DNA from: Lepidodermella squamata
Taxonomy: Eukaryota > Animalia > Gastrotricha
Assembly: GCA_047495785.1 (NCBI GenBank)
Contig: JBLDXI010000042.1
Coordinates: forward strand, 4,712,001-4,776,000
DNA length: 64,000 nucleotides
Reading direction: 5' to 3'
This document shows, piece by piece, positions 36,869-62,010 of the stretch; the stretch's first letter is position 1, and every line of letters begins with the position of its first letter. The notes beneath the pieces are model-generated. The model made no database searches. It was not told the DNA's origin and saw only the letters and a list, made by a program, of their open reading frames with translations. The translations under genes were made by a program, and so were the position numbers.

Positions 36869-37964
36869 TCAAAACTCAATCCAACTGTTGTTCGATTGTT
36901 GTTGCGAGGGCGCGGGGGCAGCCTGTTGAGCCGGAACCGGGTTTTTACCGCCGCTAGACCCGAAATCTAGGCCTAACAAGTCGTCGGAAGTGTCTCGCTT
37001 GATTTGCTGCGGCGCGGGCGCTGTTGTAGTCGCCGAAGTTAGACTGTTATTACTGCCGCTGTTCGACATGCTGCCAGACGGCGGCGGCGCGATGCCGGTC
37101 GCCGGTCTCACATGCGCCACCCTGGAGCCGGGCGGCGGGGGCGGAGGTAGCAGGGCGCCGCCTGGCCCGCCCAAGCCACCACCTGTTGATTTCTCCTTCA
37201 CCTTCATCGCGCCCATTTTGATGGTTATCGACTCGCCCTCGCGGAAACCGAGGTCCAGCTTCGGCCCGGCTGGCGCTGCACCGGCGGCGGCGGAATTCTG
37301 AGCCGCAACAGTCGCAACTTTGGCCTCTTCCTCGCGTTTCACGCCCTTGAAGTAGTCTTGCAGGGCGACGTTCATGTCGAAACTGTCGGCTCTATCGCGG
37401 AATCCCATGCCGACAAAGGCGTTTCTAGTGCCTGATTCGTCGGTGATTCGGATGACGAAAAAGCGCGACGAGTCGAGGACGGGTTCGATGGCGGGCGATG
37501 GGAAGGCTTCGATGGGGCACTGCGCATACAACTTGCCGCTTTCTTTGTCTTCGAGCTTCAGAAAGCATTTCGAACCAATTGAGATCACTTTCAACCGCCC
37601 TGTCCAGTCTGGATTGTCCAAATTCCAATCTTGAGCTCTAAAAACGACAAAAGAGAGATATCAAACTCAAGTTCTCGATAAAATATCGTTGGAAAATATG
37701 AAATTTATACAAGGATTTGAAAATGAATTTTTTAATAATTCATCAAATTTCGATTTTACCTTCAAATTCTCTCGCGTCTTTCGATTCAATTTTGAAATTA
37801 TTTTTAAAATATGTCATCATTTTATGAATTTTTCTCTCTACATTTTTGTAAAAATATTTCTATGCAACTCACTTGAAGCCACGAGCTGAAGGCCGGGGCG
37901 GGATTTTGTAGACCAGAACTTCGCTTTTCACGCAAAGCACGCTTTCATAGTGATCCTCGGACAT
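36869..37964 (-). CDS. NECAP: Adaptin ear-binding coat-associated protein; exons 37964-37873 and 37637-36869
   Basis: YESVLCVK..VYKIPPR; WNLDNPDWTGRL; DSSRFFVIRI; FDMNVALQD; LDLGFREGESI; C-terminal WIEF (WxxF). Confidence 0.95.
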
Positions 37965-38443
37965 TATTAATAAAAAATAATAACGCCTAAAAATACAGGA
38001 AAAATTTGTAGTAAAATCAAATGCTATTTCGCTCAATTTTCCATACAGAAGCCATTTTTATTTTCGCCGATTCGCAAATAAATAATTTTAAATATCGCTA
38101 TGATTACAATAATGAAGATGTTATCGCGTTAAATTGATACAAACAGGTGCGTATAATTCACAGATTTTTTCGAACCACATTCACCAATTAGTTTTCCAAT
38201 GCCAGTTTGAATTTGAAAGGCAAGTCGCCGGCAGAGAAATCGGACCAACTTCACTCGAATCAGTGAAAAACATCGAAACGACAAAAGAAAACGAACGAAT
38301 GGAGGCTCAAGAAAAATATCACCAACAAATTACGTAGTAGTAGTAGCAATAATAATATATTCCTTACTATATATCACCATATTTAAATCAAGACAGATAT
38401 ATATATGCGAGTAGAAATAGTTTTTTGTTGTTCGATAAAATAA

Positions 38444-41400: not shown

Positions 41401-44400
41401 GAGATTTTCCATGCTTAGGGATTGAAAACTCAGAAGCCCGGACTGCTATTTCTACGTTTACAGTCTTTTCATTTAGGGAAGTGAATTTTTTATGCTTAAT
41501 GACCTTCAAACTAACTTTCCTACATTTTCCAAGTTTTTAAAGATAAATCGAAAGTTCTTTCAAAAACAAGGACATTTCCCGTTATTTTCTAAATTTTTCC
41601 TCATCATATCAAGATTTTCATGCTTTTCTCAGATTTTACTGGTTTTGATATATTTCCCTTTCTAAAATTTGTATAGATTTCTACTATCTGGCAAATGCAA
41701 TCCTAATCGAATAAATCACACAAAATTTGGGTCTCACCTTGTCTTTAGTTTGCGGGATAATCTCGCGGAACTGCCGAATTTGCTCCCAGCCGGGTATATT
41801 TCGATTCGCCTGGCCCGTCGGGTTATGCCACACCTGCAACCGCTCGATTTCATGCGCGAGCAACAGCAACAACAACGTTCTCTTCGAGCGCCACGAGCGA
41901 ACATACCCCGCCTCGGCATTCATCTCCGTCGAATTCGCCAAACGATGCCGGCGGGCTGAGTTCGACGAAAACGTCGACCCAGCCGTTGAGCGGTAGTAAG
42001 ACCGCTGCTGGCTAACCTCAGCATCGTGCCGAATTATGCCGCCCGTGTTCACAAAACTCGACCCGCCAATCGACACCGAATTCGGCAGGGGGCTAGTTGC
42101 ATTTCCGCCGCCTGAAACCAACCCAGAAGCGCTGTTCACAATCACGCTAGGCAAATTCGCCGCCGAAGATCCGGGTCGAACCGGCGATGGGAAGAATTTC
42201 TTTTCGTTATTAATCGCGTTCCATAACCGGATCAAATCGGTTAGCAACGGCCGCAAATCAGCCCGCTCGTCCAGGGCGAGCATTGTTTGCAACGGTGCGG
42301 CGAAATGGTCGAGTAGAGTCGCGTAAACTCGATCTCGCAACGCCGTTCGAATGATCGAAGACCCCGGCGAGGACCTGGCTCGACTCATCGGAACAGCCCC
42401 GGGTACTAACGCCTCAGATTGCAGAAGATTCAACGCGACTAATGAAAATAGGGCCTTGGCTGATAGGGCTGAAAAACTTCGGCTCATTAAGCAGGGCCTG
42501 AGGCAACGCATAGCCAGGGCGCATAGAATTTCGGCATCAGCCGATTCGGAATATTGGGCTAAAACAGCTTTTTCCGTCAAAAATCGCAAAATAATGACAT
42601 GAGCAAGTACTGGATCGTCGTAATTCGCGGTGGAACTCGGGCTCAACAACGATTCAGACATTTGCTGGGCGAAAATATCAGCCGGTGGGGCTGGGTCGAT
42701 GGAAAACAAGCCCTGTCTCAACACGCTCGACACTTGAAACGCGGCCGAAAGCGACGAAACTAACCGTCCGCTCAAGTCAGACCTAGCCGATAGCAACCAG
42801 TCGAAACACGCCACGGCAGCCGCGGCACAGTCCTGTTTCTGATGGGTAACAGCGTGGCGGCATATCGCGGCAAGCAACGCTCGATCTCGACCGATTTTAT
42901 CACTCGTTTTTTCTTCTGAAACTAACAAGGCAGTCGCGCTGAATAGCAAATCTTGGCACGTATGAGGTTTGCCCGGGTTCAAACTCGGAATTCGCAACGA
43001 GTCGATGTACATTTGGTACAGGGCCCCTGTTTTCTTCTCCTGGGTTGAGAAACCAGTGCGAAACCCGGCTAATTTCGCGGCATACTGGCAACGGTTCATC
43101 AACTGCTGCCAGAGTGATAGCGCCGGGCCTGGAGTACTGGCTAACGAGCTAGAAACCGCCCCGCCATGGCCGATTCCGACAAATCTTAACACACCCTGGG
43201 CAGTCGGGGCCAAGCCGGCCATGCCCATTTCGCCGCTTTTCAACAGGTAATGAATCGCGTGGGATCGGGTAGTCGATGGGGCCCATCGCATAGCCTCGCG
43301 GAAAATATCAGCCGCCCTAAGGCCGAAATCAGTCAGCAACGACTCGCGACCAGCTGGGTTATCAGGCAACTGGATCGAATAACCAGGCGTGTCTGGGACC
43401 GTCAATTCAACTGTTTGCCCTTGAGGCGCGCTGACCAACGCATCGGAGAGGACTTGCAGAATGTCTAAAACCGTCGCTAACACAGTTTTCGACCACAAAA
43501 CGTGCGAAAATCTAGCGACAAGGCGCGTTAAAAAACTATCAGCCGTTCTACGGATGATTTTATGCTGATGGTTGAATTTAACCAGAAGCAACTGGGTTAG
43601 TCTATCCAACAACTGTTCTCGGGCTAATTCTCGCGGCTGGTCGGCAATTGCGCTCAATAAACTGCTGAAAACTGAATCAGCAATTGCGATCAAGGCGGAA
43701 TAAACGCCGGATTTTTCTCGCTGTAACACGCGGTCTTCGAGGTAAATGAACATCCCGTCAATACCGGCCGGGGTTAACGATTGATCCCCGCTTGAACACC
43801 TCATTTCAGCCCGATATTTCTCGATTTTATACACTGACAGTAGGTAAGTGCAATGGGCGAATGATAGACGGGAGACCATGGATGCTGTATCAGCGGCTAG
43901 GGTGTTCGAATTACCAGGCCCGTTTGGTCCGGTCGTGTTACCCTGGTTCGGATTTCCAGCAATATTAGTCGTACTATTCGAATTGGCCGGGCCTAGATTT
44001 GTCGAGGCCGGGACTGCTAACGACACTAGGGACTGGCGGTACTCACTCAACTCAGCCGAAGTAGCTGCGTCCTCACCCAGGGCGCAGGTCGATAGTAACG
44101 ACCGGGTTAAAGCCGGGTCGTTTGGTGAGACTAAAAACGGCGATTTCGCCGCTAAAATCCGCACACTTTCCGCCCACTGTGGGAACCAAAGTGGTTGAGG
44201 CGCGTCTATCGCGAGGCCTGAGGTTATAACAAACAGCCAAACGTCTCGAAACAACTTTTGCTGCTCGGCTAAAATCGGAAGGGAATCACATGCTTGCGAC
44301 ATAGCCGGCAATAATTGGCCTAGACCAACCGCAATCGACGAGGTTGAAACTACAGTGCCTTGATCACGCTTCCTCTTTGCTTCTAATCCAAGCGAGACAA

Positions 44401-46632
44401 ACGATCGGAGTAACCTCAGTAAAAGATCTGCCAATCGTTTCGACCCTGTTACACCCTGATTCTTCAACTGACCAGCCACGCTAGCTAATGTAGTGACTGT
44501 ATCTGAGACTAAATGGCGAAATTGCGCCGAGCCTGATGTGTCGTTCGAAGTTTGATACGCCGCCATTAAAATTCGCGTGAAAATGTCCATGATAGTCGCG
44601 GCTGATTCTTGCCTAGTGTTCGGGCTCGCGTATATCAAGCCAAGCTGTCTAACGATCAAAACGTCCAAAATTGGCGATGGAGGTCGAGCTAAACGTTGCT
44701 GGAGTACATTCAAAGCGAAATCATGAGACCAAGCTGGGGCGTCATCGGCAGTTGCTAAATGGCCAACTGCCAGTAAAATCGACTGAGAAACGAAGTCTCG
44801 TGCCACGCCTGATTTCGACGACTCAACTACATATAACCGTTTAGGTAGCGCCCTTAAAATCGAATTTGACATTGAATCGTTATCTGTGTTCGATAGACTC
44901 TGGCAGCGAACTAAGCCGAGAATGGCAGCTTGGCGTAAGTTATGAAGTACCTCCCCTGCTGCTCCTGGCACGCCTGGGGAGCTTGCGTAGTCATTTAAAG
45001 CGACCATGTGCGTTGGAGTTAGAGTGTTATCTCCGCCCATAGATTTAGAGGTAGAACTCGTAGAAGGTTCGCTGGTTGATTGAGCACCGGCGATATGCCG
45101 AGCTAAACGAAGCAACAGCGGCGCTGGCTCAGTAACAAATTGCTGTAGTACATTCGAAGCTGCGTCAACTGCGCCGGGAAATCGGCTTGCCAATTCAATA
45201 ATTGCCTGAAATTTAGAGAGATGTTACAGAAATCTAATCAATTCCTGATTTTTCTTACGTTTATGCAAATCATGTAGAGCTCTCTATGTGAGCTGACTGA
45301 ATTAGTTGTAACAGCGGCTTCTCGTGACATTAGCTGGCTACCTAGCCGTCGAATAATCGACTCGGCTTCATGCTGTGTAACAGTTATTCCAGCCAATATC
45401 GAAACACAAACCGCCGTTGAAGCAATATGCAATGTGCGAGCTTGAGGACTTCGCGGCACAGAGGCTGCATTGCCATGTTGCTGATGGTCGAGCAACTCGT
45501 GGGAAAGAGCCGAAATCGCCGAGGTCAGAGATTTCAACGACTCGCTGTTATCGACTCCAGAGGAATTTGTTGTGTTTATAGCGTTGGCAAATGCAGGCCA
45601 TAATTCCTTGATTGCGATCAGAATGTTGTAACGGAAAGATTCAATAATAGACGTTGAGTATATGAATCGACGCCTTGAAACACGCTTTGTCGCTATCATT
45701 TCGGATAAATGATCACCAACGCCAAATACGGGAATAATACTGAGTAGTTTGCATAGCGATCGCAGAATGCGAGACAGATCGGCAAATTGAAGAGGTAATA
45801 TCATCTTCGCCTCATTCTGATTGTTTCCAGACGCAGAAAATAGCGTTGAACCAATGTCGTCGTAAAATTTGTGGTTGTATTCTTGCTTTTGATTTTCATT
45901 TCCAGGTATAGATTTGTAGTGTTCGGTAATTCGCGCTAAGAAAGGTGATACTTTCGTATCATTCTTGTTAGTCAAAACACGACCGAATGCACGGCAAAAA
46001 CCGAAAAATTGCGGTATGGCTGAAGTCAGCAACGCTGGAACGCTATTAGCAGCAGCTGAAGAAGACTCGTCAGTTGTATTGGTTGAAACACAAGGCGCGA
46101 GTACAGGGCCCAAAGCCGCAACAAGACTGTCGAAATATGCCATAAGCCCTGTAGTTATTTGAGGCCTTAGCTGGGTTTGCTGCCAAGCAACTTCCGATAA
46201 CGTAGACACAATTATGAAAGATATACACTCGCCAGGAGGTAATGCTAAATAAATTCAGGTTAGCGGCAAATAATAGCACCTTTTCACAGACTTACAATAA
46301 TGGAAGTCGAAATTTCCGGAAAGCGATGCAGTAGGTAGAACTCGAAGCATTGCCAGTAGTTGTCTAATGATATCAGAGAGAGTTCCATCCTAGAATAGCA
46401 GAATGAAAGAAATTACTTGGTACAACAACGATTCAATTGCACTTACGTCATCTCGTTTAGAAAGGTGACTTAGAGCGCTGATACATAGACTTGACGCACT
46501 AAGCAACTGCCGCGAGCCATCAAGCAGCTTAGGGGCGCGAATGTTGCTGACAGTACCCAATATAGTTTTCTTCAAATCAGATGAACTGACTTTGGAGGAA
46601 ACGAGTCCCAGCAATACAAACGTCTCATCCAT
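38444..46632 (-). CDS. PI4KA: Phosphatidylinositol 4-kinase III alpha; exons 46632-46447, 46389-46296, 46244-45259, 45205-41738, 40237-38444
   Basis: KLFRDVWLF; YLLSVYKIE; YIPQMVQALRHD; PMQSAAKAPYLARF; IFKVGDDVRQD; IKDRHNGN; HIDFGFLFESSPGGNLGFE; YQQNEIQY. Confidence 0.96.
40606..41245. mobile_element. Tc1/mariner (pogo/Tigger-like) MITE in a PI4KA intron
   Basis: Perfect 22-bp TIRs CAGTAAAACCTGTTATCTCGAA; TA TSD on both sides; many internal TTCGAG/TTCGAC subterminal motifs. Confidence 0.9.
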
Positions 46633-46804
46633 GTTTTATATCATCATTATAAATTCAACTAGAAAGGGAGTAACATAGAAAAAAACATATCTCCATTACA
46701 TGCAAGTAGGCGATTTTCCATTCACCATTCACGACCTGTAAACAGAAGGGTCACGAAGACCGAAGACTCCATTTGCTATTGCTACCGTTTCCCATATCGT
46801 GGGT

Positions 46805-46953
46805 CGTGGGTAGAAGTGCCCTTTAAGAGGGCGTTGCTCTCAGAAGGTTTAGTAGTAGTTTAGTTTAGCTACGTTTAGGGTTGGGGGTAAGGTTGCCCCC
46901 TAAGAGTGAGCCCTCTGAGAGCCACGCCCTCTTGGAGGGCACTTCTACTCGCG
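46805..46953. repeat. Imperfect ~40-bp inverted repeat (small foldback/MITE) in the PI4KA-CRELD divergent promoter
   Basis: GTAGAAGTGCCCTTTAAGAGGGCGTTGCTCTCAGA ... TCTGAGAGCCACGCCCTCTTGGAGGGCACTTCTAC, with a TTAG/TTAGGG-like loop. Confidence 0.7.
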
Positions 46954-47436
46954 AAATTGGAGGAGGCCCTCACGACCACCTTAGACCTCAGACCTCATAT
47001 TGCAGCTCCTTCCGGTAATCCGGTAATCCCCACAAAAACTTGCCCTCTCCTTAGTTACCCTCGATCATTCTGCAAAAATATATTAAAAAATCCTTTTTAG
47101 AATTACAAGGTTCGATACGTTTGATAAAATTTTCGTCGTTAAGCATTATTTATATATAAAAAAATGTCACAAGGTCGTATGAAAAAATCTTGTAGCCGGT
47201 TTTCGGCGCCAAGTCGTCGTCAGCTTTTTTGCTCAGAAAACCAGCCTGATTTTTTTTCCAGAAAGGTACAAAAGCTGAGTGATGAAGTTTCAGTTTTTGT
47301 CCGTTCAGTCATAATTTGATTTTGAAACACCCTAAACACGTTACGATCGTTATCTTATTCACCGATTAATATTGAGCTGTAACTCTCTGTAACTCTTGAT
47401 AGGTGTTTACTGTTCCTCAATTTTCGCTGTTCTTCA

Positions 47437-48909
47437 ATGCTGCAAAACATTTCTGCAGCTGTACTAATATTAGCCGCCTTTGCACTTTCGACCTCCGCAG
47501 AAAAGTTCACGCTATCTGAAAAATGTGATAAGTGTAAAACCATCTCACGAGAGTTCAAGGAAGGTTTAGTTCGGACTGCGAAATCGAATTTCGGGGGTGG
47601 AAATACTGCGTGGGAAGAAAAGAAGCTGAAAGGTTTCGCTGCTAGTGAAACTCGACTCATTGAAATCGTCGAATCTATTTGCTCCAGTGATAAGTTCTGC
47701 AGTTTATTCATGGAGTCCCATGAAGAAACTATAGAGAAGTGGTGGTTTGATAATGCGGAACTACTTAGAACTTCAAGTACGACTGACGAAGGCGCTGCTC
47801 AAGTTGCTGACAAGTTTGCAGATTTCCTTTGTGTCAAAGAAACTTCAGTTTGTTGTCCAAATAATACATACGGTCCAAGCTGCACTCCATGCCCTACTAA
47901 AATATCCGGGCTGTCTTGCTCGGCTAATGGCAAGTGTGATGGTGATGGAACTCGATCAGGAACTGGTAAATGCTCTTGCAATCAAGGCTACAACGGCGAT
48001 GAATGCTCTTCGTGTTCTGATGGTTATTTCTCTTCGGCGCCCGACGATAAGTCTTACGTATGTACTGCCTGCGAATCGAACTGCGAAAGTTGCAGCGCAG
48101 CTGGTCCCGGTCAATGCGAGGAATGTGCGAAAGGATTTGAATTAAGAACACCCGAAGGCAGCGAAACAGGATCATGCCATGATATCGACGAATGCGGAGC
48201 GGAAGAATCGCCGTGCAAAGCACCATCAACGTACTGCGAAAATACACCAGGTTCGCACAAATGTATGTCGTGCGATTCATCGTGTGATTCTGCAGGCTGT
48301 ACAGGCGCAGGCCCAGGAGCTTGCATCGGTGACTGTGTCACTGGCTATTCGAAAATCGAGGGTCGGTGCGAGGATATTGATGAATGTACTGCAGCTGAGG
48401 CTAATGGTCAGAAAATATGCGGGGAGCCTAAAGCTGGCGAATCCGTGTCACCCGTTTGCGTCAATACCCCTGGGTCTTACCGATGCAGTTGCTCCGAAGA
48501 GGGTTACGAGTATGGCGAGGGCACTTGCTCTGCTGTGAAAAAGGAGGAGCCTAAGGAAGAGTCGACTGAACATGGGAAGAAAAAGTATACTGACCCGAAA
48601 AAGAAGACTAAGAAGGAGAAGAAAGATACCAATAAACCGTTGACCAACAAATCTGCTGCTCCAACGAAAGGCTCGTCGTCGCTCGAAACTGATTTTAACC
48701 TCATCCACTTTTGTGCCCTTCTCGTTATTAGCATCATTGTGATTTCCTTCCTTGCGTCAAAGCCGCGACCGTGGCCCGCTGTGGCCGGTGTCTTGCTGGT
48801 TCTAATGGCTGTGTACGTGTATTATTACGTGGGAACGCACGAGCCGAAGAAAGGTGCTGATTCTGATTCTTCAAGCTCTAGCAAACCCAAAGCGTCGCGA
48901 AGAAGTTGA
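47437..48909 (+). CDS. CRELD: Cysteine-rich with EGF-like domains protein (membrane-anchored, CRELD1-type); intronless
   Basis: Signal peptide; CDKC; NFGGGNTAWEE; SETRLIEIVE; furin-like and Ca-EGF repeats (DIDEC, CVNTPGSYRC); two C-terminal TM helices. Confidence 0.93.
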   Translation: MLQNISAAVLILAAFALSTSAEKFTLSEKCDKCKTISREFKEGLVRTAKSNFGGGNTAWEEKKLKGFAASETRLIEIVESICSSDKFCSLFMESHEETIEKWWFDNAELLRTSSTTDEGAAQVADKFADFLCVKETSVCCPNNTYGPSCTPCPTKISGLSCSANGKCDGDGTRSGTGKCSCNQGYNGDECSSCSDGYFSSAPDDKSYVCTACESNCESCSAAGPGQCEECAKGFELRTPEGSETGSCHDIDECGAEESPCKAPSTYCENTPGSHKCMSCDSSCDSAGCTGAGPGACIGDCVTGYSKIEGRCEDIDECTAAEANGQKICGEPKAGESVSPVCVNTPGSYRCSCSEEGYEYGEGTCSAVKKEEPKEESTEHGKKKYTDPKKKTKKEKKDTNKPLTNKSAAPTKGSSSLETDFNLIHFCALLVISIIVISFLASKPRPWPAVAGVLLVLMAVYVYYYVGTHEPKKGADSDSSSSSKPKASRRS

Positions 48910-49295
48910 GAAACGAATTCCATGGTACCGCTGATAAAATATTTACGTAGCTCTACAAAAACCGTATGCAATTTTGTTCAAAGTGTGTTGTAGCAATGTT
49001 GTAACGTTGTTATTTCTGGCTTTAACTGGGTTCAACTCGGTTTGAGCAAGGCAGTGTGTTTCAATATTATGATAATATTGGAGGGTGTAGTCTTTCTTTT
49101 TGTTTTTTTTTTCTCGCCGTGTGTTCACGCCCGATGGCTAAAATGACAGATGTCAATCTATCTATAGGCTCCTTGCTGTTTTAAGTTGATGAAAAGTGAA
49201 TTAAATTATTTCAATTTCATAATAAATTCCGAAAATTCTGCAATTTCTTCTGCTTTTGTTTCTAGTTAGTTTTATCTGATTTTTTCTATTGAAAA

Positions 49296-52200
49296 ATGGT
49301 GTTGACGTCGGCAGCTGGTGTCATCGCGCTGTTGCAAGAGCGCGAGACTGAGATGAAAGTGTTCGCGCTCAAGCGTCTGAACTTGCTAGTCGACGAATTC
49401 TGGCCCGAAATCAGCGAGGCAATCGAACAACTCGAAGTACTATACGAAGACGCCGCTTTTCGCGAACGCGAACTAGCCGCTCTGGTCGCCTCAAAAGTCT
49501 ACTACCACCTCGGCGCCTACGAAGAAGCCATGCGATTCGCCCTAGCCGCCGGTCGTCATTTCGACATCAATCAGCGCAGCGAATATGTCGACACCATTGT
49601 CGCGAAATGCCTGGATGAATACGTCCGTCTACGCGTCGAATCTTGGGGGTCGAGCAACTCGGCTGACGTTAGGATCGACGCCCGACTCGAATCTGTTGTC
49701 CAGCGTATGTTCCACCGGTGTGTTGAGCATCGCCAATATCAACAAGCCATTGGAATGGCGCTCGAAACTCGCCACGTCGAGGTGCTCGAGAAGGCAATCA
49801 TGGCCGCGGCTGCGAATTCCGAAGACCACGCCGCTGTCCCTGCTGCCCTGACCTACTGCTACCGGGTCGCTATGTCCCTGGTTGATTGCCGCAAGTTCCG
49901 CGATGAGGTCTTGCGAGTTCTAGTCCGTCTGTACTCGGCTCTTCCCGAGCCTGATTACCTTAGCATGGCCGCTTGTCTGATTCACTTGGACGATGCTGAT
50001 TCTGTTGCTAGGGCGCTGGAGCAGCTGCTTCACCGTGGCTCCTCGCAAGAATCTGGCGCTGAACGGTCGTTATTGATCTGCTACCAATTGGCCTTTGATT
50101 TGTACGACACGGCTAGTCAGCAATTTGTCCACCGTGTGATTTCAGCCCTGAGAGCCGGTCCATCCCCTGCCCCGGTGTCTACCATTCCCGCCTCGACTGA
50201 GCCGCCCGCTTCAGCCCTGGCCGCGACCGGACCCGGTTCGCCCTTTAAAACGCCTAGGGTTACCGACACGCGAAGTGTCGCCCTTCCGCCGATGACCGGC
50301 AGCGGTTCCGGGTCGGTTGAAGAGCCGCTGCGTCGCCTGGTGTCAATTCTCCAGGGCGACGTGACGACTTCGTTGCATTTGCAGTTTTTGATCCGCAATA
50401 ACCATGCGGATTTGACGATTCTGAAGCAGACGAAGGAGCAGGTTCGCCAGTTGGTGTGCCATACGGCTACGATTCTGACGAACGCCTTCATGCACTGCGG
50501 CACCACTATGGATGCGTTTTTGCGCGACAACCTCGAATGGCTGGCTCGTGCGACCAACTGGGCTAAATTCACTGCAACTGCCTCGTTAGGTAAGGAACTT
50601 GAAAATTTACATATAGGAAAATTGGAGATTGAAGCTAAACTTACACGCTAAAACTCAGGCTATCAACTAGTCTGAGCTATGTATTTGATTGAAAATTGTC
50701 TCAGACCTAAATTTAGATCGTGACTCATTTTCTCTTAGTTTTTCTCTATTTTTCAATAATTTTTCTTCGAATTCGCTTTTATTAAGACGGGAAATATCTC
50801 GTAGGAATATTTGCGATGTTTTATTGCGGGAAAATCTGTTCAATATATTCTGCTCCAACATTCAATATTCAGTCGGATCGTACAATTTTAGTAGTTGCAT
50901 TTCAAGTTTTTTGGGTGAGAACATCGTATTTTTATTTGGAAAAATTACACAATTAAAATACCAACTTGTAGACGCTTCTGGGGCCAAAAATGACAGATTT
51001 CAATATTTTTAGTATTTTTGATTTTTTCAATATTTAAAGGGGAACAGCAAAAATCTAGGATACTCATGACGTGAAATATTTGATTTATTCCACATTTATT
51101 TCCTAAACAATCTCAGAATTGTTTAAATCATGGATGATTTGGAAATTACATTTCATCTTCAAATAAAGTCGAAATTATTTATTTACTCGATTACAAAGAC
51201 CTTCGGCCTCTAGGTTTATTCCGAATAAATTTTTTTCAGTGCTTAAATGAGGAAGCACGCTTCACCCAAGCCTGAATGGATTATTTTTATGAAGAAGGCT
51301 TGGGGACCAAGAATTTCCCAAAATCATTGAAATCATTGAAATTCGACTAGGCTCGTCGTATTCCAGGTATCCTTTAGTTCAACCAGTTTGATGGCTAAAA
51401 TAGGGGATGTTTGTTTTTTCAAAAATTCTCTCATTGTTTTAACATTTTCAGGCATCATTCACCGCGGTCATGAACGCGATGCTCTGACCATGTTGGCTCA
51501 ATATTTGCCGCGCGAGGAAGCTGGTGGAGCCGCGCCTGCTGCCGGAGCCGGCGGCAACGCAGCCGGCGGAGGGGCTGGTGGCCACACCTCCGGCTCGCCC
51601 TACTCAGACGGCGGCGGTCTCTACGCCCTGGGCCTCATCTACGCCAACCACGGCCGCGACGTTGTCGACTACCTGCTGAACCAGCTGAAAAACGCCAAGT
51701 CGGACATCGTGAAACACGGCGCCTGCCTCGGCCTCGGTCTCGCCGCAATGGGATCGGCCCGTCGCGACGCCTACGAGCAGCTGCGTTTCGAGCTGTACCA
51801 GGACTCAGCTATTAGCGGAGAAGCGGCCGCCATCGGCATTGGCCTTACTATGATGGGAACGGGCAGTGACGAGGCAATCCGCGATCTGCTGCAATACGCG
51901 AAAGACACGCAACACGAGAAAATCCAACGCGGCCTCGCTCTAGGCCTTGCCTTCGCCACAATCGGCCGCATGGAGGAGTCAGACACCCTGATCGAGCAAC
52001 TCCTCACCGATAAAGAGGCTGTTCTCCGCTGGGCTGGTTGCCTGGTCGTCGCGGCGTCCTACGCCGGCACTGGCAGTAACGTTGCACTGAGGAAGCTGCT
52101 CCACTCGGCTGTGACTGACGTGAGCGACGATGTGCGCCGCACGGCTGTCACGTCGATTGGTTTCGTGCTGTGCCGCCAGCCTGAGCAAGTCCCGGCTGTT

Positions 52201-55073
52201 GTTTCGCTCCTGTTGGAGTCGTACAACCCGCACGTGCGTTACGGCGCTGCCATGGCCCTGGGTGTTGCCTGCGCTGGGTCGGGCAATCGCGACGCTCTGC
52301 AACTGCTCGAACCCCTTCTTCAGGTAATTTAAACAAAAAAATAACAATCAAAACCCACGAATACTTATTAAAGCAGCCTTTTCTACTACTAATGGAATTT
52401 ATTGACTAGCATTTCACTGTTTACAAGTTGCCGTTGCTTTTTCTCACAATATTGTTGCAAATTCAAATTTTTTACACAATTCAAGCTTTATGCAATTTAA
52501 AACTGGGTCATTCCCAGGCAAAAGTGCACAAAAGAATTTGAAAATGCATCATAGATGTCAAAACAGGTGACGAGGAATGCTATAATGAAAATAAAAACCA
52601 TGAAAATTAGTTTACGAAAACGCGAAATATTAGCCGTATAAGTGCGTATTAGTATCTTATGGCCGTGATATAATTTCCCAAAATCTTTGAATTATGCAGG
52701 ATATTTTCAAGTATTTTTAACTCAAAATACACGCGAGTTATTTAGCGTTTAATTGGATTTAAATTGCATGCTCAGTGCTTTCAGTGCTGCGAAAGGAAAA
52801 TAATACGAACTTGTTGCTGCCATTAACTTTTTCGCGTGTCAAGTGGTGAACTGTTGAAATAATTGGCTGCCATTCAATTCTATGCACTTATTCTTACTTC
52901 TACTCGGCAAATTTTTTTTAATTAGTTCTAATTAAATTCAATTATATTCAATTTTGTAATTCAATTACTTTTTTTTAAGATTGTCTACTTTCGACCTAGA
53001 TTACTGACGCTAAAAATTTTTAACTAATTGTAATTCTGCAGGACTCTTTCTTCAGTACATTTGAAAAAAACTGGGAGAACTGAAAATTCTTAAAATTAAA
53101 TTGATTGAGATGAAAAAAATCAGATGTCCATTCAATAGCGTTTATCAGTCAAATTTTGATAATCAAAAATGAAAATCTGAATGAAAATAGCCTAAATATG
53201 TCTATTAATCACTAAAACTTAAAAATCTCGAAATTCTTCGATTATCGAAGTGTTATTTAGTCGTAAATGAGCCATCAATTTAGCTTTCTTGACGTGATGT
53301 GATGAAGATTCAAAACCTGAATAATAAAAAGCAATATTTTCAATTCTTTGTATTTCAATTAGGATTCGGCTGGATTCGTCCGTCAAGGTGTCCTCATCGC
53401 CTCGGCGCTCATTCTGATCCAACACAACGACGTGACCTGCCCGCGCGTTGCCGCCAACTTCCGCGGCATCTACGCCCGCCTGGTCGCCGATAAGCACGAA
53501 GACCCGTTGGTCAAATTCGGCGCCATCCTCGCTCAAGGCATCATCGACGCCGGCGGCCGCAACCTGACCATCGCCCTGTGCTCCCGCACCGGCCAGCACT
53601 TGTACCTGCCGGGCATTGTCGGCCTGCTCGGTTTCGTGCAAATGTGGTTCTGGTTCCCATTGTCGAATTTCCTCGCTCTCGCCTTCACGTCGTCGTGCTT
53701 GATCGGCCTGAACGGCCAACTTCGCATGCCTCGGACCAATTTCCTGTCCTCAGCCCGCCCTTCAACCTTCGCCTACGTGCCGCCGGTTGAAGACCGTCGC
53801 GCCAAGCGAGTTGAGCGCATTGAGGCCGCTGTTTTGAGTGTTGCTGAGAAGCAGCGCCGCAAACAGGAGGCCGTTGCTAAGGCGAAGGATGACACGAAGG
53901 CGGATGCGGCGAAAGCGGCTGGTGAGGCGATGGAGGTCGACTCGAAGAAAACGGAGAAGACCGAGACAACCACTGCAGCTGCTGCAACGACTACCACCAC
54001 TGCAACCCCAGCTGTAAGTTTTAAATTATCACGAAATAGGACATTTCTAGTTACTTCACTAAGTTCAATAAGTGAAGATTTTATTAGATTTTCCATTCCG
54101 TAAAATTTTAAATGGAAGATCTCAGTATCGAAGTTGAAAAATGAAAAATTCGAAGCTTGAATGTGAACTTGAAACTTGGTAATCATTAAGATTGATATTT
54201 TTTAATTTTCATGCCAAATTTTTGGCTTGAACTTCTAACTTGAACTTCTAAATAGGAAAATCCTATTTTTTCTACGCTTAGCCCTTGCTCTTTTGAAGTT
54301 CTAAAATTGTAACCTAAGGTTGGTGAAGTAATTCCTGATTTTTCTGCAATTTTTGGGAATTTTTTTTAGATTTTATGGCCTCGTGAATTTCAAGGGTTAA
54401 AGCCGTTGAGAAGGAGAATTAGTAAAAAATTTACACATTTCTTAAGTTGTAAAAGGTGAAGCCCTGAAACTTTCGCAAAACATCACCCAACTGTTGAGAG
54501 AATTCCGGAAAATCTTCAAGAAATATTTTCTTTTCTTGAACAAGCCAAGAGATTTAAGCCAATTTCCACCAAGTTAATTTGCTCGGTTGTTTACTGTACT
54601 TATTGTCTGAACTGTTTAATTAATGTTCGTTAATTTTATAGGCCGAAGGCGGGGAAGCTGCTGCCACTGGTGACAAACCAGCCGAGAAAACCGAGAAGGA
54701 GAAAGCTGCCCCGGAGCCGACGAGCCAATTGCTGGCGAACCCAGCCCGCGTGTTGCTGCAACAACTGCGCGTCATGTCGCTCCCCGCCGACTCCGGCTAC
54801 GAAGCTGTGCGCGACCTCCGCTCCGGCGGTTCTGGCATCATCATGCTGGCGCGGCGGTTGCCGCCCGGCGACTCGGCCGACTCAGCGCAGGCCGAGGAGG
54901 ACCTGCTCGATATGGACGTTTTAGGAGCGGCTGCGCCTAGCGCAACCAGCGGGACCACCTCGGCCGCGACCGGATCTTCGACAGCCGGCGGGGCTTCTCG
55001 GGGCGCGGCTCAAGAAGACGACGACCAGCCTGAACCCGAACCGCCAGCGCCGTTCGAGTGGACCGATGAGTAG
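49296..55073 (+). CDS. PSMD1: 26S proteasome regulatory subunit Rpn2; exons 49296-50589, 51452-52323, 53363-54013, 54642-55073
   Basis: [11 protein letters not shown]; FWPEISE; [12 protein letters not shown]; PC repeats; [10 protein letters not shown]; [13 protein letters not shown]; NPARV; C-terminal [10 protein letters not shown]. Confidence 0.97.
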
Positions 55074-57413
55074 CCGCCGGCCGGTATAACGTTCTCTCTC
55101 TCCCCTCCCGTTTTTTGACAGAAATAAATGTATAGAAAAAACAAAACTATAACCAACAACAAAACGTTCTTTTCAAGCTTTTCTAGCCTCGTCAAGACAG
55201 GCTCTAATACAGTATGAAAACCATGATTATTCTCGCAACAAATATCTGTTACAATAACGATTGCCGAAAGTTGCTCCTTGGAAGCGTATTCTCTGTCCAA
55301 CAGAGGCGTTTCCGCTGTGTGATGAAATGACTTTGCGCACATTCTATGGTACGGAATGCTTTCGGTTGTGTTTGCTGCATCTCTTGTCGAGCTAGGATTC
55401 TATACGTTATAATAAGGCAGAGTTTGGAAATAAATTAAACGCGACAAGAACGGGCGGTTGTCTTTTGAAATCTTGGTAACGGAAGTTGACGAGCTAAATC
55501 TTGGCTGCTGGCATTTGGTTGCAGTTTAACGTAATCCAGGCCTAGACAACTAGGTCAAGGTCATTCGCCATGCAAAATTAAATTTTCCATTTCAAAAGCG
55601 CGTGCAACAATTACCAAATACCAAACGATTCACCGTCATTGAAAGCCTTTTATCAAGTTTCATGAAATTTGGTTGGAATCTGAGCGCTCACTCGAAAATT
55701 TGGCGATTTTGTCGGAATTGCCACGGTTGAGTAGCCCTGGCGTAGTCGCATGTCAAGTCCACGCCTAATGATTTCGAATAATACTTCGACCATGCAAACT
55801 TTTAGCTTCTTGCGAACCGTTCACATTTTGGCAGATACCGCCTTTGAGCTTGTACAATTTACAATAATCTATGAACTATTGGAGGAGTAACTACCGAAAA
55901 GAATAGGGTGACAAAAATCGAACCCGGGAAGGTAACGACCAAATGAGAGCGGTACCGTTGGCTAGCCCAAAAAAGCCAGCCTGGCTGTGTACAATACACC
56001 GATAGCTGCTAACTATATCAGGACATGAAATAACATGCATGAGTTATTGGAAAATGTTTATTCTCGGAACTTTTCGGGTCTTTACCTTACTACATTCGAT
56101 TCTTGATTTGCCAAAAGTTCAGATTTGCGATCCAATCGATTCAATCGCTAAGCCTAAGTCGTTTCAGCATAATACGCTGGTTGCGACGCTTTGTTCTCTA
56201 AATTCTATATTATTATTCTTTTTCTACTCATAGAAAGTATATTGCGTGCTCGTTGAAGTTCCTGGACGATCCTTTGGTTTCACAACACAGCAAAAGTGTA
56301 GGTAATGGTCGCTCCATATCGTGTCGCGGAAACACAATGGAGCGACCGTTACACGCAGCGAACACAGATGCATGGTTCCGATACGAGAAAAGCTTGGAAA
56401 TATCGTCACCCTAAAGCCTTTAAGCCCGTACCCCGCGTTTCACGTGATCAACTTTCGCATCGGGCTTTATTCTCGTGTTGAATGTGTCCAATGTGTTTTT
56501 CATGTTCTCCCTAATTTCGAAACAAAACTGTCTGGTCGTTTTTTGACCTCATGTTAACCTAGTAAAACACCGCGACGAAAGGAAAGTAATTCAAAGGGTA
56601 GTTTTATTCAAATAATAGTTTATAATGGAGGTGTATATAATTTTTCGTGAAGAAGTTGCAACTTTTAACTCCAATAGAAAATCGCCATGACACACCTTTA
56701 CCCGCTTTACCCAGCCAATATTTAACGTGAGCAATCGGCTATATTTGAGAAGCAGTATTAGGTACATAGTATTTATAATAACTTCGTTCGAATCATCTGC
56801 GTGTACATTTCGGCAGCTAGGCATGAAATCAAATTCAATCGCGGGAATAATAGTTAGTTTATGAAAAGCATGCTTTTTTAAACCCTTGTTATTGCTGTAG
56901 TAAGATGCTGCTTAGCAAATAAAGAAAATCGACACACGTGAAAAAATTAAAAACAACATGCACCTCCATAGATAGTCTTCTCGCAACTGGAGAGCGGAAC
57001 GGGTGGCTTCGGTTCGCTGAACATATTTTGTTACCCTAATAAAATCTATCCCTGAAAAAATAAAATGAAAAACTCGGAAAAAAAATCATCAAAATTTATT
57101 CCTCATCACAATGATAATCCAAAACAATCAAAAAAGATGGAAGACAATGAAGTTTTCGCAAAACCATATTTCAGCCGGAGCCCTCGCGAAAAATGGAGCC
57201 GAAAAATGAAAACTATAAAAAAAACAAGAAAAAATTAAAAAAAATCCTTGATGAATTTCATACCAATAAGATGCTCATAAAATAAAACGATCCCCTCAAT
57301 TTAATCAATGCATTGATTCGACCTGACTGAAAAAAATAAAAAATAAATAAAAATAAAAAATAAAAAAAAATGAGAAAATGAAAGAAATTGGAAAAATGAT
57401 GTCAATGTTGATT

Positions 57414-59297
57414 TCACGGTATTATCCCGAAGGTTTGGCTCATTTCTTGCCAATGCGGATGGCAAATTAATGACTGGGGTAAGAATTTATCCATCCAGCG
57501 TAATGCTTCTATGAAAGCAGATGTTACAGATTCCCGAAAAAAATAGAAAGTATGCTCTATGCCCGTTGAATCTTCCCGCATCATCCCCGATGCATCCCGT
57601 GGTGCAGTAAGTGCAGTATAATAGGTGTGGCAATACCTTGAGAACAAGGAATTTCCATTGTTCTGACAGAAGAACAGATTCGCACACAACAAGGCAAAGT
57701 CTAATTGGGAAGGTCTTAACGCAAACATTTGCGCAACGGCTTCACCAATTTTAGCCTGGATGATGTCGTGGAAGCCGCTGAAATGGCGCTGGAAAAGATC
57801 TACAGAGTATGGATCTCCCAGGGAGAAGAAGTTGACGGCCGAAGGTGGCGCTTGTTGGTTGTACGTGTTGTATGCCAACGAGGCTGTCATTATTGGAAAG
57901 ATGGATCTAGCGAACATTTCCCTTCTCTCATCGTGTGTCAGTTGCCGAAATCCTGGAAAGGGAAAATGTTTCACCGGAAAAGGAATAAGTAATATTTCAT
58001 ACCTGGTAAATTGCGAATAAATGCTGCGATGAAGCTGAGATTCTTTTCAAAGCTTTGGGTCAGCACTGTCTCCCACAACTGCAGTGAATTTTGAGCAGAG
58101 CCCGGAGGTATAATGACGGCTGGATTGTTGCACATCTCAATCAGGTATTTACTCGCTTCGCTAACTGCGTTGTGGAACTCAAGCGGTAGATCAACAGCAG
58201 GCGAATTTTGAACCACGCTCGACACTGATTGAGGAGGCTCGACTTCTTTCGGGGAAAGCTTTGGCTCCTGCAAAACTTCTGGCGGAATACTTGGTGCAGT
58301 GGGGACATAATTATTCAGAGTTGATTGGATGCTATGTGTGGAATTGTTATCAGAGGAAGCAGGCGTATCCATGTTTTTCACCATAGCCATCTTCCGCCGC
58401 AAAACAGGGCCCGCAAGAAGCTTCTTCCGATTCTCCAAATGCCTAACGTATTTCGCTGCATCTAACCGCTGCGTTAGAGATCTGCGACCACGTTTTGAGG
58501 CGTCGAGTGACATCCCTGCCGTTAGGCACTCCTCGAATCTGCAGTGTTTGCATCGCTCGATACGCTCCTTTCTTCCTACGCTCGTGGCGATGCCGAATCC
58601 GAACGCGCATCTCAGATTGCGTCCGATGTTGCGCCGAAAGAAGCCTTTACAGCCCTCACAAGTCATGGCGCCGAAGTGATACCTTGTACATCATTCGAGT
58701 AACAACAAAATCCCATTAAAAAATTCAAAATGCCATACCCACTACTTGATGCCTCGCATACAACGCATGGAATGAGGCGAATGCTTACTCGTCGACCATC
58801 TGGCTTAGCAGCTACAGGTTGAACACGCTGTGAAGGAGATGGGGCATCTTGAGGCTCCAATTTCGGCTCAAGCACGGCTCTTTGCACATTCGGCGCCATG
58901 AGTTCATGGCACTTTCTCGCACGGCAAGGTCTGCAAAGATCGGAACCAACACTGTAAGACCGGTCGGCCGGGCAGTAGCATGATTTTTCGCATAATTTGA
59001 GTTCATTCAGGACGACCCTTCTGTAGAATTTCTGAAGAATTTATAAACACTATTATATTCGAGTTAAATTAATCATGAAATCCTAACCTTGCAAGCCGTG
59101 CAGACCGAGGATCGATTTTTGGCCAAGATGCTTTTTTCTGATTTTTGACCGAATGCTGCCGATTTGTCGTCGGTTTTCGATGTCGGGTAGCGCCTGACAC
59201 CCTCGACCTCAATGAGGTCTTCCAAGGGTTTGTCAGTTTTCGCCGAGGCAATTCTGCGCGAGCAAACCGAGCACGTGTCAACTTTGCAGGAAGTCAT
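57414..59297 (-). CDS. Nuclear receptor with two tandem DBDs (2DBD-NR-like); exons 59297-59088, 59031-58739, 58682-58003, 57952-57414
   Basis: DBD1: CSVC...CTACK|KFYRR...CEKSCYC...CRPCRARKC. DBD2: CVVC...YHFGAMTCEGCKGFFRR...CKHCRFEECLTAGM. Grip-box-like KRGRRS; LBD signature FIRNLPG|FRQLTHDER. All three introns (56, 56, 50 nt) are GT-AG and in frame. Confidence 0.8.
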
Positions 59298-60660
59298 TAT
59301 GCGGAAACTCAGCTTCAAAATCCACTGAGGCTCTGCAGTCGACCTCGAATATGACAATTTATAATGAAATTGCAAGTGATGTTTTTTTCCAACACATAGC
59401 TGAAGTATTCTTACCTTTCACAACAAAGAGAGCAACATTCCAGGTATTATTTTTGTGCAAGCGTACTAAGACCTAAATTTTTACTACGAGTTGTGTTGCG
59501 TAGTCACGCTTGGTGTAAAGACATACAATGACCCAGGGATTATTTGCCGCTGTGCTGCCGCGCTCGCTGCAGCCTTTTTATTGTGCGCAATGAATAATGG
59601 TCAAACTTGTGTGCCGGAGTAATTTTAGGAACTGCGGCAACGCGGCAACTTCTCACTCAGCTGTTTGGTGAATGCGATGATGTTTTTGTCTAATCTCACG
59701 CCATTAAATTACGCCGCGTTGACCAAGTGAATAACGTATAACGTACACTTGCTCACATGCTTTAGCCGGTGCAAACTTGCATCAACTGTTTTAGGAATAC
59801 GTCAGTTAATACACTCAAGCCCTCTCTTCTCTCGTGCGGGTAAGATTGATGTCTAACTTTGGAGACGTAAATTTATTTTCACGTTTCACACTGCTGCTTT
59901 AGCTTGCCTTTTTACCTACGTGTTGGGCTGTGGTAATAGATGGCTCGTGTAATCGTATGGTGTGGTTAGATGTTGAGTTGACATTATAGAAGAAGGCCGC
60001 TGTGAACTCACTAATTAATCTGATTACAGCTTTTAACCCGAGTTAGAAATCAGACAGCTGCAGCTGCAGTCTTTGAAGACATGAAATTATTGCAGCAGTG
60101 AACAATTGTTTCAGACGCCCAAATTAAGCCTAATCAACTTTTTTCATTATTTTTATAACGCCAGCCCTTACTCAGATTCAAACCGAATTTTTTTAAACAA
60201 TTTGATGAATAATGCCCTGAAGATGTGGGAATCATGTGGAATCAAATTCGTCATTATCTGATGCGTGGGTGAACTGCAAAATGGAATATTAACTTTCGCA
60301 TGGCAAACGATCTTGACCGCGTTTACTAGACCTGGCTCAACCTCTGAATAGGAACTCCATAATAAGTGAGGAATTACTTGATCAGTACTCAATAACCATC
60401 CTCAAATATCTGAAATTAAACTATATTTTTTCATGTATCTTTGACGTAAAAGACTCGTGACTGGCGAGGCTAATTTAAAAAATAGCTCCATGGTCAAAAT
60501 TCAGTAATTTTTAATTTGATCACTTTTATAAAGCTCAAGTGATTGCACTCAATTTTTTAAGCATTCACAGTACAAAAAACACAGTTGAACCAATATATGA
60601 ACGTGATATTAGCAACGTTATTCGCTATACTCCGTGAGCGTGAATTCCAGGCTGCTCGCA

Positions 60661-62010
<1,350 letters not shown>

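What the first reader, a model, noticed from the sequence alone, without database searches (positions are those of the whole stretch)
57414..59297. Hidden two-DBD nuclear receptor with both DBDs atypical
Seen: splicing 59088 to 59031 (GTTAGG...CTTCAG, 56 nt) creates CTACKKFYRR and a second finger (C..C..C...CRPCRARKC), in frame with the CEGCKG DBD. Established: 2DBD-NRs, first described in flatworms, have P-boxes CEACKK and CEGCKG. Unusual here: the first P-box is CTACKK (the base-reading Glu is replaced by Thr); finger 1 of DBD1 has a 53-aa loop instead of 13; the inter-DBD linker is about 44 aa; and finger 2 of DBD2 lacks its second Cys (CAFGFGI). Inference: altered DNA specificity or a repurposed first DBD. 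The gene may also help place the organism taxonomically.
Basis: partly seen in the sequence, partly recalled or inferred. Interest (0 to 1): 0.75.

Follow-up and report, generated by a model that had tools for sequence, protein, structure and literature searches.

The report
Expressed two-DBD nuclear receptor, remodelled fingers
This is a real, transcribed gene for a hormone-receptor-type gene switch of the rare class with two DNA-binding modules; both modules are rebuilt in ways absent from the published catalogue, but it is one more member of a divergent family already met elsewhere in this genome.

Summary
The four coding exons give an uninterrupted 573-codon frame.

- **First DBD:** C-x2-C, a 53-residue loop, CTACKK|KFYRR, then C-x5-C-x12-C-x2-C.
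- **Tether:** 47 residues.
- **Second DBD:** CEGCKG, with only three cysteines in its second finger.
- **LBD:** the exon 4 model matches only solved nuclear-receptor LBDs.

Differences between the window and two runs are 24 synonymous to 4 non-synonymous, and 6 of 6 are synonymous in exons 1-2.

The closest relatives are two paralogues in this genome and an unnamed metagenome scaffold of another species. All three carry the same hidden first DBD and the same K|K intron. Beyond unnamed relatives, the best outside matches are canonical two-DBD receptors (amphioxus, Clonorchis 2DBD-gamma). A canonical CEACKK/CEGCKG gene of this genome sits at the base of the gene's clade.

Verdict: a new variant of a known kind (2DBD-NR, NR7). 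Zinc and DNA binding of the rebuilt modules are untested. The scan has reported the same remodelled family on other DNA of this genome (s1-379641, s1-394149, s1-398218 and others). The joined protein was not sent to any search or fold tool.

The parts
59415..59483 (-). 5'UTR exon. This is the minimal extent; the 5' end is not determined. It holds a 6-codon uORF starting at 59438.
   Evidence: X1 joint 59341/59413 (cut +2), 69 letters on the shorter side. Sequence and frames.
59344..59414 (-). 5'UTR intron, 71 nt, GT..AG
59088..59343 (-). Exon 1. Start codon at 59297. Codes residues 1-70, the whole first zinc finger of DBD1 up to CTACK.
59103..59261 (-). The 53-residue insertion loop of DBD1 finger 1 (residues 13-65). 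The published norm is 13.
   Evidence: Three listed differences inside it are all synonymous. Partly conserved with paralogue L002.
59032..59087 (-). Intron 1, 56 nt, phase 0, splitting the P-box/recognition helix between K70 and K71.
   Evidence: X1 spliced contig. Same position in L002, L003, L008 and L014.
58739..59031 (-). Exon 2: rest of the DBD1 helix (KFYRR), DBD1 finger 2, the tether, and the first two Cys of DBD2.
58909..58992 (-). DBD1 finger 2: C84, C88, C90, x12, C103-x2-C106, RARK, C111.
   Evidence: Aligned in register to the canonical first-DBD profile: 12.0 bits, 0 of 2000 shuffles.
58768..58908 (-). Inter-DBD tether, 47 residues (residues 112-158). Its end (RVSIRLIP) is conserved with relatives.
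   Evidence: Published range is 17-22 (PMC10497141).
58683..58738 (-). Intron 2, 56 nt, inside DBD2 finger 1 (SSSG|YHFG).
   Evidence: X1 joint 58678/58735 (cut +4).
58511..58767 (-). DBD2 (residues 159-225, interrupted by intron 2): CVVC, 13-residue loop, CEGCKGFFRR, then a three-Cys second finger.
   Evidence: Pfam zf-C4 5.5e-14 on exon 3. AlphaFold model pLDDT 86.6; all 50 listed PDB matches are NR DBDs.
58541..58609 (-). DBD2 finger 2 (C193 ... C212-x2-C215) lacking the sixth cysteine.
58003..58682 (-). Exon 3: DBD2 from YHFG, the C-terminal extension, the hinge, and the start of the LBD.
57953..58002 (-). Intron 3, 50 nt.
   Evidence: X1 joint 57951/58002 (cut +1).
57414..57952 (-). Exon 4: the rest of the LBD and the stop codon (57416-57414).
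   Evidence: Colinear with paralogues to the last residue. Pfam Hormone_recep 0.0016, below cut-off. AlphaFold pLDDT 90.5; all 50 listed PDB matches are NR LBDs.
57085..57413 (-). Probable 3'UTR with a 51-nt intron (57263-57213). Its link to this transcript is not shown, because contigs break at a T-rich repeat.
   Evidence: X1 depth and joint 57212/57264. AATAAA near 57100.

Best explanation
The locus is an intact, expressed gene for a 573-residue transcription factor descended from the two-DBD nuclear receptors (2DBD-NR, NR7).

**Shown here**
- The exon structure and the continuous reading frame.
- Purifying selection on all exons.
- A canonical recognition helix and first zinc module in DBD2.
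- A nuclear-receptor LBD fold.
- Membership of a lineage-specific clade that has a canonical 2DBD-NR at its base.

**Inferred mechanism**
- DBD2 with its C-terminal extension reads an AGGTCA-type half-site, much as the monomer-binding NR1 receptors (ROR, Rev-erb) do.
- DBD1 keeps a full set of cysteines and the Lys/Arg residues of the reading helix, but has Thr in place of the base-reading Glu. It acts as a second reader of different specificity, held on a 47-residue flexible tether.
- The 53-residue loop is a surface excursion from the tip of finger 1.
- The second zinc module of DBD2 has lost one ligand and its D-box, so D-box-mediated dimerisation on DNA is unlikely. The two DBDs of one chain may take the place of a dimer.
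For: - **Splicing:** X1 contigs show spliced joints at all four introns. X2 shows none; it spans intron 3, and its listed pieces break inside introns 1 and 2.
- **Frame:** 1722-nt open frame. The first long-ORF ATG follows an in-frame stop in the spliced leader.
- **Selection:** 24 synonymous to 4 non-synonymous differences, and 6 of 6 synonymous in exons 1-2.
- **DBD2:** Pfam zf-C4 5.5e-14.
- **DBD1 exons** match a canonical first-DBD profile in register: 12.0 bits with 0/2000 shuffles, and 5.3 bits with 63/2000.
- **Paralogues** L002, L003 and L008 share the CxACK|KF[FY]xR intron and the Cys pattern.
- **Another species:** scaffold L014 (GC 37%) has the same module upstream of the called gene P0006.
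- **Profile search:** unnamed ENA relatives come first, then canonical 2DBD-NRs.
- **Tree:** this gene with L002, L003 and P0006 at SH-aLRT 98; an 18-row clade including the canonical L010 and P0028 at 100.
- **HFG signature of DBD2:** 32/32 canonical 2DBD-NRs have it, against HYG in 33/42 single-DBD rows.
- **Models:** LBD pLDDT 90.5 and DBD2 pLDDT 86.6. Both match only NR LBDs or NR DBDs among the 50 listed; ROR and Rev-erb are the most identical DBDs at 40-48%.
Against: - Pfam finds nothing in exon 1 or exon 2 taken alone at E up to 1. Exon 1's profile match is weak (p about 0.03).
- No zinc or DNA binding was tested.
- The joined protein could not be scanned or folded, so DBD1 as a whole has no model.
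- The tree is unrooted and used the simpler LG+G4 model.
- X1 is only guessed to be RNA by its record; its spliced contigs are what show it.
- Only 28 of 62 differences were listed.
- The DBD2 second finger may not hold zinc at all.
Confidence: 0.78

Rival explanations
1. The first module is a decayed relic. It no longer folds round zinc or touches DNA, and survives as a disordered N-terminal regulatory (A/B-like) region of an otherwise single-DBD receptor.
For: - No Pfam match in exons 1 or 2.
- A 53-residue loop, where the published norm is 13 (PMC10497141).
- The base-reading Glu is replaced.
- The tether is more than twice the published length.
- Loop length and sequence vary freely among relatives, from 13 to 53 residues.
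Against: - All eight ligand positions are filled by Cys in this gene. The ligand Cys pattern recurs across paralogues and in another species, although some relatives replace one ligand.
- Lys70, Arg74 and Arg75 of the reading helix are kept.
- All 6 listed differences in exons 1-2 are synonymous.
- The profile match is in register.
Confidence: 0.15
2. Exons 1 and 2 up to Met114 are untranslated leader. The protein is a single-DBD receptor starting at 58899.
For: - Public gene calls for relatives (P0001, P0004, P0006) begin after or inside the first module.
- A short uORF shows that the leader is not free of ATGs.
Against: - ATG 59297 opens the whole 573-codon frame and has A at -3.
- Only synonymous differences are listed in exons 1-2.
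- The frame and the Cys pattern are conserved in L002, L003, L008 and L014.
- The public calls come from an intron-blind caller on metagenome contigs.
Confidence: 0.04
3. The two-DBD layout arose independently in this lineage by internal duplication of a single-DBD NR1-like gene, so the likeness to NR7 is convergent.
For: - The exon 2 piece scores the same against first-DBD and second-DBD profiles (12.0 and 12.3 bits).
- The tree has no outgroup beyond NR1.
- Nematode 2DBD-NRs also fall outside the main group in the literature (PMC10497141).
Against: - The clade contains canonical members with the CEACKK-CEGCKG pair and a 22-residue tether (L010, P0028) at its base.
- The ACKKF signature of the first P-box region and the HFG signature of the second are those of NR7.
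Confidence: 0.03

Closest known systems
2DBD-NRA (NR7A) receptors, e.g. Schistosoma mansoni and Clonorchis sinensis 2DBD-NRs and the amphioxus 2DBD-NRA (Wu et al. 2007, PMC1810520; Wu & LoVerde 2023, PMC10497141)
   Same: - Two zf-C4-type modules ahead of one LBD.
- The IPCxVC..SSGxHFG start of DBD2.
- Beyond unnamed relatives, these are the best outside matches of the family profile.
- A canonical member of this genome roots the gene's clade.
   Different: - First P-box residue is Thr, not Glu.
- Finger-1 loop is 53 residues, not 13.
- Finger 2 of DBD1 has a 12-residue, not 9-residue, second loop and an extra Cys.
- Tether is 47 residues, not 17-22.
- DBD2 lacks its sixth Cys.
- DBD1 is split by a K|K intron.
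- The paper reports canonical zinc modules in both DBDs 'with very little exception'.
Nematode 2DBD-NRs (2DBD-NRC of Caenorhabditis remanei, C. brenneri and Aphelenchus avenae; PMC10497141)
   Same: A lineage-specific, fast-evolving set of two-DBD receptors with highly variable P-boxes, inside a genome with a very large NR expansion. Here at least 150 zf-C4 matches were scored out of 438 candidates.
   Different: - The organism here has motile-cilium genes, and its NECAP gene is closest to those of molluscs and a brachiopod.
- The clade here still contains a canonical CEACKK/CEGCKG member.
- No nematode protein was identified among the few top matches whose source was looked up.
Monomer-binding NR1 receptors (ROR/HR3, Rev-erb/E75)
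   Same: - CEGCKGFFRR reading helix and a helical C-terminal extension.
- The most identical solved DBDs to the DBD2 model: 40-48% identity, rmsd 3.1-3.9 over about 70 columns.
- NR1 receptors form the neighbouring clade in the tree.
   Different: - They have a single DBD.
- HYG, not HFG, in finger 1.
- An intact four-Cys second finger.

Membership tests
Nuclear receptor superfamily | zf-C4 DNA-binding domain (Pfam PF00105) above the curated cut-off | tested here: met
   Exon 3 alone: 52.8 bits, E 5.5e-14, cut-off 21.1, profile positions 13-69. The model matches only NR DBDs among the 50 listed.
Nuclear receptor superfamily | C-terminal ligand-binding domain (Pfam PF00104, helical sandwich) | tested here: met
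   Pfam on exon 4 alone is below the cut-off (18.4 against 23.5 bits). The AlphaFold model of exon 4 (pLDDT 90.5) matches NR LBDs in all 50 listed PDB hits (TM 0.48-0.70 by query, though no Foldseek E-value reaches 0.001). Paralogue L008 passes Pfam at 30.7 bits.
2DBD-NR (NR7) | A second, N-terminal zf-C4 DBD in the same chain | tested here: inconclusive
   Pfam finds none in exon 1 or exon 2 taken apart, and the joined protein was not scanned. A profile of 48 canonical first DBDs matches both exons in register: 12.0 bits with 0/2000 shuffles, and 5.3 bits with 63/2000. All eight Cys are present.
2DBD-NR (NR7) | P-box pair CEACKK - CEGCKG (group A) | tested here: not met
   The second box is exact (CEGCKG). 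The first is CTACKK, 5 of 6. Relatives have T, G, S, L or E at that place.
2DBD-NR (NR7) | Canonical modules C-X2-C-X13-C-X2-C and C-X5-C-X9-C-X2-C in both DBDs | tested here: not met
   DBD1 is X2, X53, X2, then X5, X12, X2. DBD2 finger 1 is canonical, and finger 2 has three Cys only.
2DBD-NR (NR7) | 17-22 residues between the DBDs | tested here: not met
   47 residues by the same count that gives 22 for the canonical L010 and 21 for L014.
2DBD-NR (NR7) | Groups with named 2DBD-NRs in a tree | tested here: inconclusive
   The gene lies in an 18-row clade (SH-aLRT 100) that includes canonical two-DBD genes (L010, P0028). Named 2DBD-NRs and NR1 receptors form the two other clades. The tree is unrooted and uses the LG+G4 quick search.

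The most novel reading that the evidence does not exclude
The family has turned the first DBD into a tunable second reader. The zinc core and the Lys/Arg contacts are kept. The base-reading P-box residue (T, G, S, L, E), the finger-1 loop (13 to 53 residues) and the tether (21 to over 100 residues) vary from gene to gene. Each paralogue would then recognise a different two-part site from a single chain, without dimerising. Here the D-box is lost in DBD2, and in the paralogues it is also cut to one residue in DBD1. This would be a spiralian counterpart of the nematode receptor radiation, built on a different principle.
Probability: 0.3. Interest if true: 0.65.

Novelty: new variant of a known kind. 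Interest (0 to 1): 0.5.

Why it matters
Two-DBD receptors are a small, little-studied subfamily. No DNA target logic for the tandem DBDs has been worked out, and the published catalogue describes their zinc modules as almost invariant.

This gene, with its paralogues and a relative in another species, shows three things:
- The first DBD tolerates a fourfold longer finger loop.
- The reading residue can change.
- The second DBD can lose a zinc ligand while staying under purifying selection.

That gives natural variants for asking what each DBD contributes. It also shows that intron-blind or Pfam-only annotation hides the first DBD, so counts of 2DBD-NRs in poorly annotated spiralians are probably too low.

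On its own the gene is one member of a family that this scan has already reported several times in this genome.

Tried and rejected
- **Pfam on exons 1 and 2 alone:** no family at E up to 1.
- **Word-index protein searches:**
  - The L002 open frame at a threshold I set too strictly (1e-5) found nothing.
  - Exon 3 at 1e-3 also found nothing. The hoped-for RNA-derived spliced fragment of this gene is therefore not in that collection.
- **Possible extra intron in exon 4:** there is a GT at 57637, where an X1 contig begins with 28 unplaced letters. I rejected it because the unspliced exon is colinear with L002, L003 and L008 to the last residue. The break lies between two contigs, as at other variant sites.
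- **In-frame start upstream of 59297:** none; the spliced leader has an in-frame stop.
- **MAFFT alignment A3 of exon fragments:** it put exon 1's CTACK under the CRPCR column, so I did not use it.
- **Mixture-model tree:** it did not finish in two runs. The LG+G4 quick tree was used instead.
- **Exon 1 of L009/L011:** not found within the fetched flank.
- **Organism:** could not be named. Run and organism names are coded, and a findings search by words gave nothing.
- It was never sent to a family scan, protein search or fold. Hence there is no Pfam two-hit test and no model of the whole DBD1.

Full report
**What is in the sequence.** The gene lies on the minus strand. Reading 59297 downwards gives a start codon and 70 codons ending in CTACK. 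A GT..AG intron of 56 nt (59087-59032) follows, then an exon opening with KFYRR. Two further short introns (58738-58683, 56 nt; 58002-57953, 50 nt) link this to the exon with CEGCKGFFRR and to the last exon. The four pieces make 1722 nt, 573 codons plus a stop, with no internal stop. I built the joined frame only inside a script, to count positions.

**Is it transcribed and spliced as claimed?** Two public runs hold the stretch.
- Run X1 is marked only as 'RNA?', but its contigs carry joints with GT..AG ends at exactly the four introns.
- One 868-nt contig holds 119 letters of exon 1, all of exon 2 and 452 letters of exon 3.
- Another contig joins a 5'UTR exon across a 71-nt intron (59414-59344).
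- Run X2 shows no joint at any of these introns and reads straight through intron 3, as DNA would. Its listed pieces break inside introns 1 and 2.
- So the acceptor is 59031, not 59020.
- In the spliced leader the frame of ATG 59297 is closed by a stop with no ATG after it. A six-codon uORF lies in another frame.

**Is it coding?** The listed differences between the window and the two runs fall on 28 coding positions: 24 synonymous and 4 non-synonymous. The three in exon 1 all lie inside the long loop, and the three in exon 2 are spread along it. All six are synonymous. By my own rough estimate, only about a quarter of random changes would be synonymous. The table showed 28 coding differences, and 34 more differences were not listed.

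**Anatomy**.

| Part | Layout |
|---|---|
| DBD1 finger 1 | C9-x2-C12, 53 residues, C66-x2-C69 |
| DBD1 reading helix | CTACKK then FYRR, split by intron 1 between K70 and K71 |
| DBD1 finger 2 | C84, C88, C90, twelve residues, C103-x2-C106, then RARK and C111 |
| Tether | 47 residues, ending in a conserved RVSIRLIP |
| DBD2 finger 1 | C159-x2-C162, 13 residues, CEGCKG at 176 |
| DBD2 finger 2 | C193, then no Cys until C212-x2-C215 |

Pfam sees zf-C4 in exon 3 (5.5e-14). It gives a sub-threshold Hormone_recep match in exon 4 (0.0016) and nothing in exons 1 or 2 alone.

**Is the first module homologous to a receptor DBD?** I built profiles from the first and second DBDs of 48 canonical two-DBD receptors found.
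- The first 50 residues of exon 2 score 12.0 bits against the first-DBD profile. They match profile positions 25-67 from the exon's first residue, and 0 of 2000 shuffles reach this score.
- The end of exon 1 matches positions 13-24 at 5.3 bits, reached by 63 of 2000 shuffles.
- The two matches therefore abut exactly at the intron.
- The alignment puts C84 and C90 on the canonical fifth and sixth cysteines (C-x5-C). The paralogues keep only the C88/C90-type C-x-C.

**Relatives in the same genome.**
- Exon-by-exon searches of the assembly found two close paralogues. L002 lies on the same contig 2 Mb away, with 49% identity in exons 2 and 3. L003 lies on contig 13 and has P-box CTPCKK. More distant copies are L008, L009/L011, L005 and L004.
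- L002, L003 and L008 share the K|K intron, a long finger-1 loop (51 residues in L002), the KF[FY]xR helix, the C-x-C (C-x-H in L003) and the closing C-x2-CR of finger 2.
- On contig 17 the genome also has a fully canonical two-DBD receptor, L010. It has CEACKK and CEGCKG, 13-residue loops, C-x5-C, a 22-residue tether and two Pfam zf-C4 stretches (E 2.9e-35).
- L005 is intermediate: its single-exon first DBD gives Pfam 17.1 bits and 29.2 bits against my profile.
- The genome as a whole has at least 150 scored zf-C4 matches out of 438 candidates.

**Relatives elsewhere.**
- Two word-index searches found nothing.
- An exhaustive profile search with the family alignment A2 found 9839 proteins. 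The best six are unnamed proteins from ENA metagenome assemblies. Canonical two-DBD receptors follow: amphioxus P0007, Ptychodera P0008, Spirometra P0010 and Clonorchis '2DBD gamma' P0012.
- P0006 is the closest to this gene. Its scaffold (L014, GC 37%, so another species) carries a hidden first DBD upstream of the called start. It reads M-E-T-T-C-R, a predicted short intron, VCERS, 30 residues, VCSACK, an intron at the same K|K place, KFFRR, ECSC and CRPCRARRC. A tether of 21 residues follows.
- The public gene calls P0001, P0004 and P0006 all start after or inside the first module. It is therefore hidden there too.

**Tree.** It was built on DBD2 to the C-terminus with 92 rows and 397 columns, using LG+G4 in a quick search. 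The mixture model did not finish.
- This gene groups with L002, L003 and P0006 (SH-aLRT 98).
- That group sits in an 18-row clade of all the own-genome and ENA relatives (SH-aLRT 100). The first split inside this clade separates the canonical L010 and P0028 from the rest.
- The named 2DBD-NRs and the NR1 receptors (HR3, Rev-erb, LXR-like) form the two other clades.
- The tree is unrooted. It therefore shows that the family descends from a canonical two-DBD gene, but not by itself that it lies inside NR7A.
- One independent character agrees. Finger 1 of DBD2 reads HFG in 32 of 32 canonical two-DBD receptors and in this gene, whereas 33 of 42 single-DBD rows read HYG.

**The three-Cys finger of DBD2.** In an alignment of 69 DBDs the sixth-Cys column is filled in at least 90% of rows but not here. 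The same loss is seen in L002, L008, L009, P0001 and P0006. L003 has a Cys next to the fifth. P0013 and P0024 have C-x-H. So this is an old, tolerated state and not a private defect.
- The AlphaFold model of exon 3's first 95 residues is confident (pLDDT 86.6; 81-86 over the odd loop).
- It shows a helix running into C212.
- All 50 listed PDB matches are receptor DBDs. ROR and Rev-erb are the most identical, at 40-48%.
- The tool returns no coordinates, so I could not look for a replacement ligand.

**LBD.** The model of exon 4 has pLDDT 90.5. All 50 listed PDB matches are receptor LBDs, with TM up to 0.70 by the query.

**How it probably works.**
- Shown: an expressed, constrained protein with two receptor-type zinc modules and an LBD.
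- Inferred from established DBD-DNA structures, recalled from memory: DBD2 reads an AGGTCA-type half-site with help from its helical extension, as monomeric NR1 receptors do.
- DBD1 keeps the Lys and the two Arg that contact DNA but has Thr for the base-reading Glu, so it should read something else.
- The 47-residue tether would allow variable spacing between the two sites.
- The 53-residue hydrophilic loop is probably a flexible excursion.
- The loss of the D-box in DBD2 argues against dimer contacts on DNA.
- None of this was tested.

**Comparison and novelty.**
- By descent and layout the gene is a two-DBD receptor.
- It fails three descriptive criteria of the published class: the P-box pair, the canonical Cys spacing, and the 17-22-residue tether (PMC10497141). 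I therefore file it as a new variant of a known kind.
- The scan's earlier notes on other DNA of this genome describe the same remodelled family and large tandem arrays of it. My results agree with them.
- New here for this gene's branch are the RNA proof of this gene's junction, the cross-species hidden DBD1 in L014, the register test and the HFG character.

**Organism.** It remains unnamed. A NECAP gene in the window is closest to an unnamed ENA protein. Its next-best matches are molluscs and a brachiopod, which points to a spiralian without an annotated proteome.

Noticed in passing
window 57213-57263 (minus strand): X1 contigs skip a 51-nt GT..AG intron about 150 nt downstream of the receptor's stop codon. 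Depth then falls near an AATAAA at about 57100. If it belongs to this transcript, it is a 3'UTR intron of the kind that can trigger nonsense-mediated decay.
   Followed up: no
window 59421-59438 (minus strand): A six-codon uORF (ATG at 59438) lies in the spliced 5'UTR exon, out of frame with the main ORF.
   Followed up: partly
window 22260-26742 (+ strand): Two long adjacent open frames look like an intact non-LTR retrotransposon. The first is 550 aa with Cys/His knuckle-like motifs. The second is 946 aa with endonuclease and reverse-transcriptase-like sequence.
   Followed up: no
window 56378-56997 and 57470-57581: Seven low-depth 'opposite strands' joints in X1 contigs lie downstream of the gene, and one lies inside exon 4. 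They are probably library hairpin artefacts, but this is unexplained.
   Followed up: no
G000 contig pairs C31/C48, C25/C26, C15/C105, C28/C33: Receptor loci recur in pairs on different contigs with equal or nearly equal scores. For example, L009 and L011 differ by a few residues and one short indel. These are haplotigs or very recent segmental duplicates, so gene counts for the expansion may be inflated.
   Followed up: partly
L014 (ENA ERZ23486787 scaffold), 3620-4000: The public gene call P0006 starts at an internal Met. The open frame runs 49 codons further upstream into finger 2 of a first DBD, and two more small exons complete that DBD. The calls for P0001 and P0004 look truncated in the same way.
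   Followed up: partly
window 36869-55073 and 60796-61590: The neighbours are ordinary housekeeping genes: NECAP, a PI4KA-like kinase, a PSMD1/Rpn2-like proteasome subunit and an RNF121-like RING membrane protein. This receptor is therefore a singleton and not part of a tandem array.
   Followed up: partly
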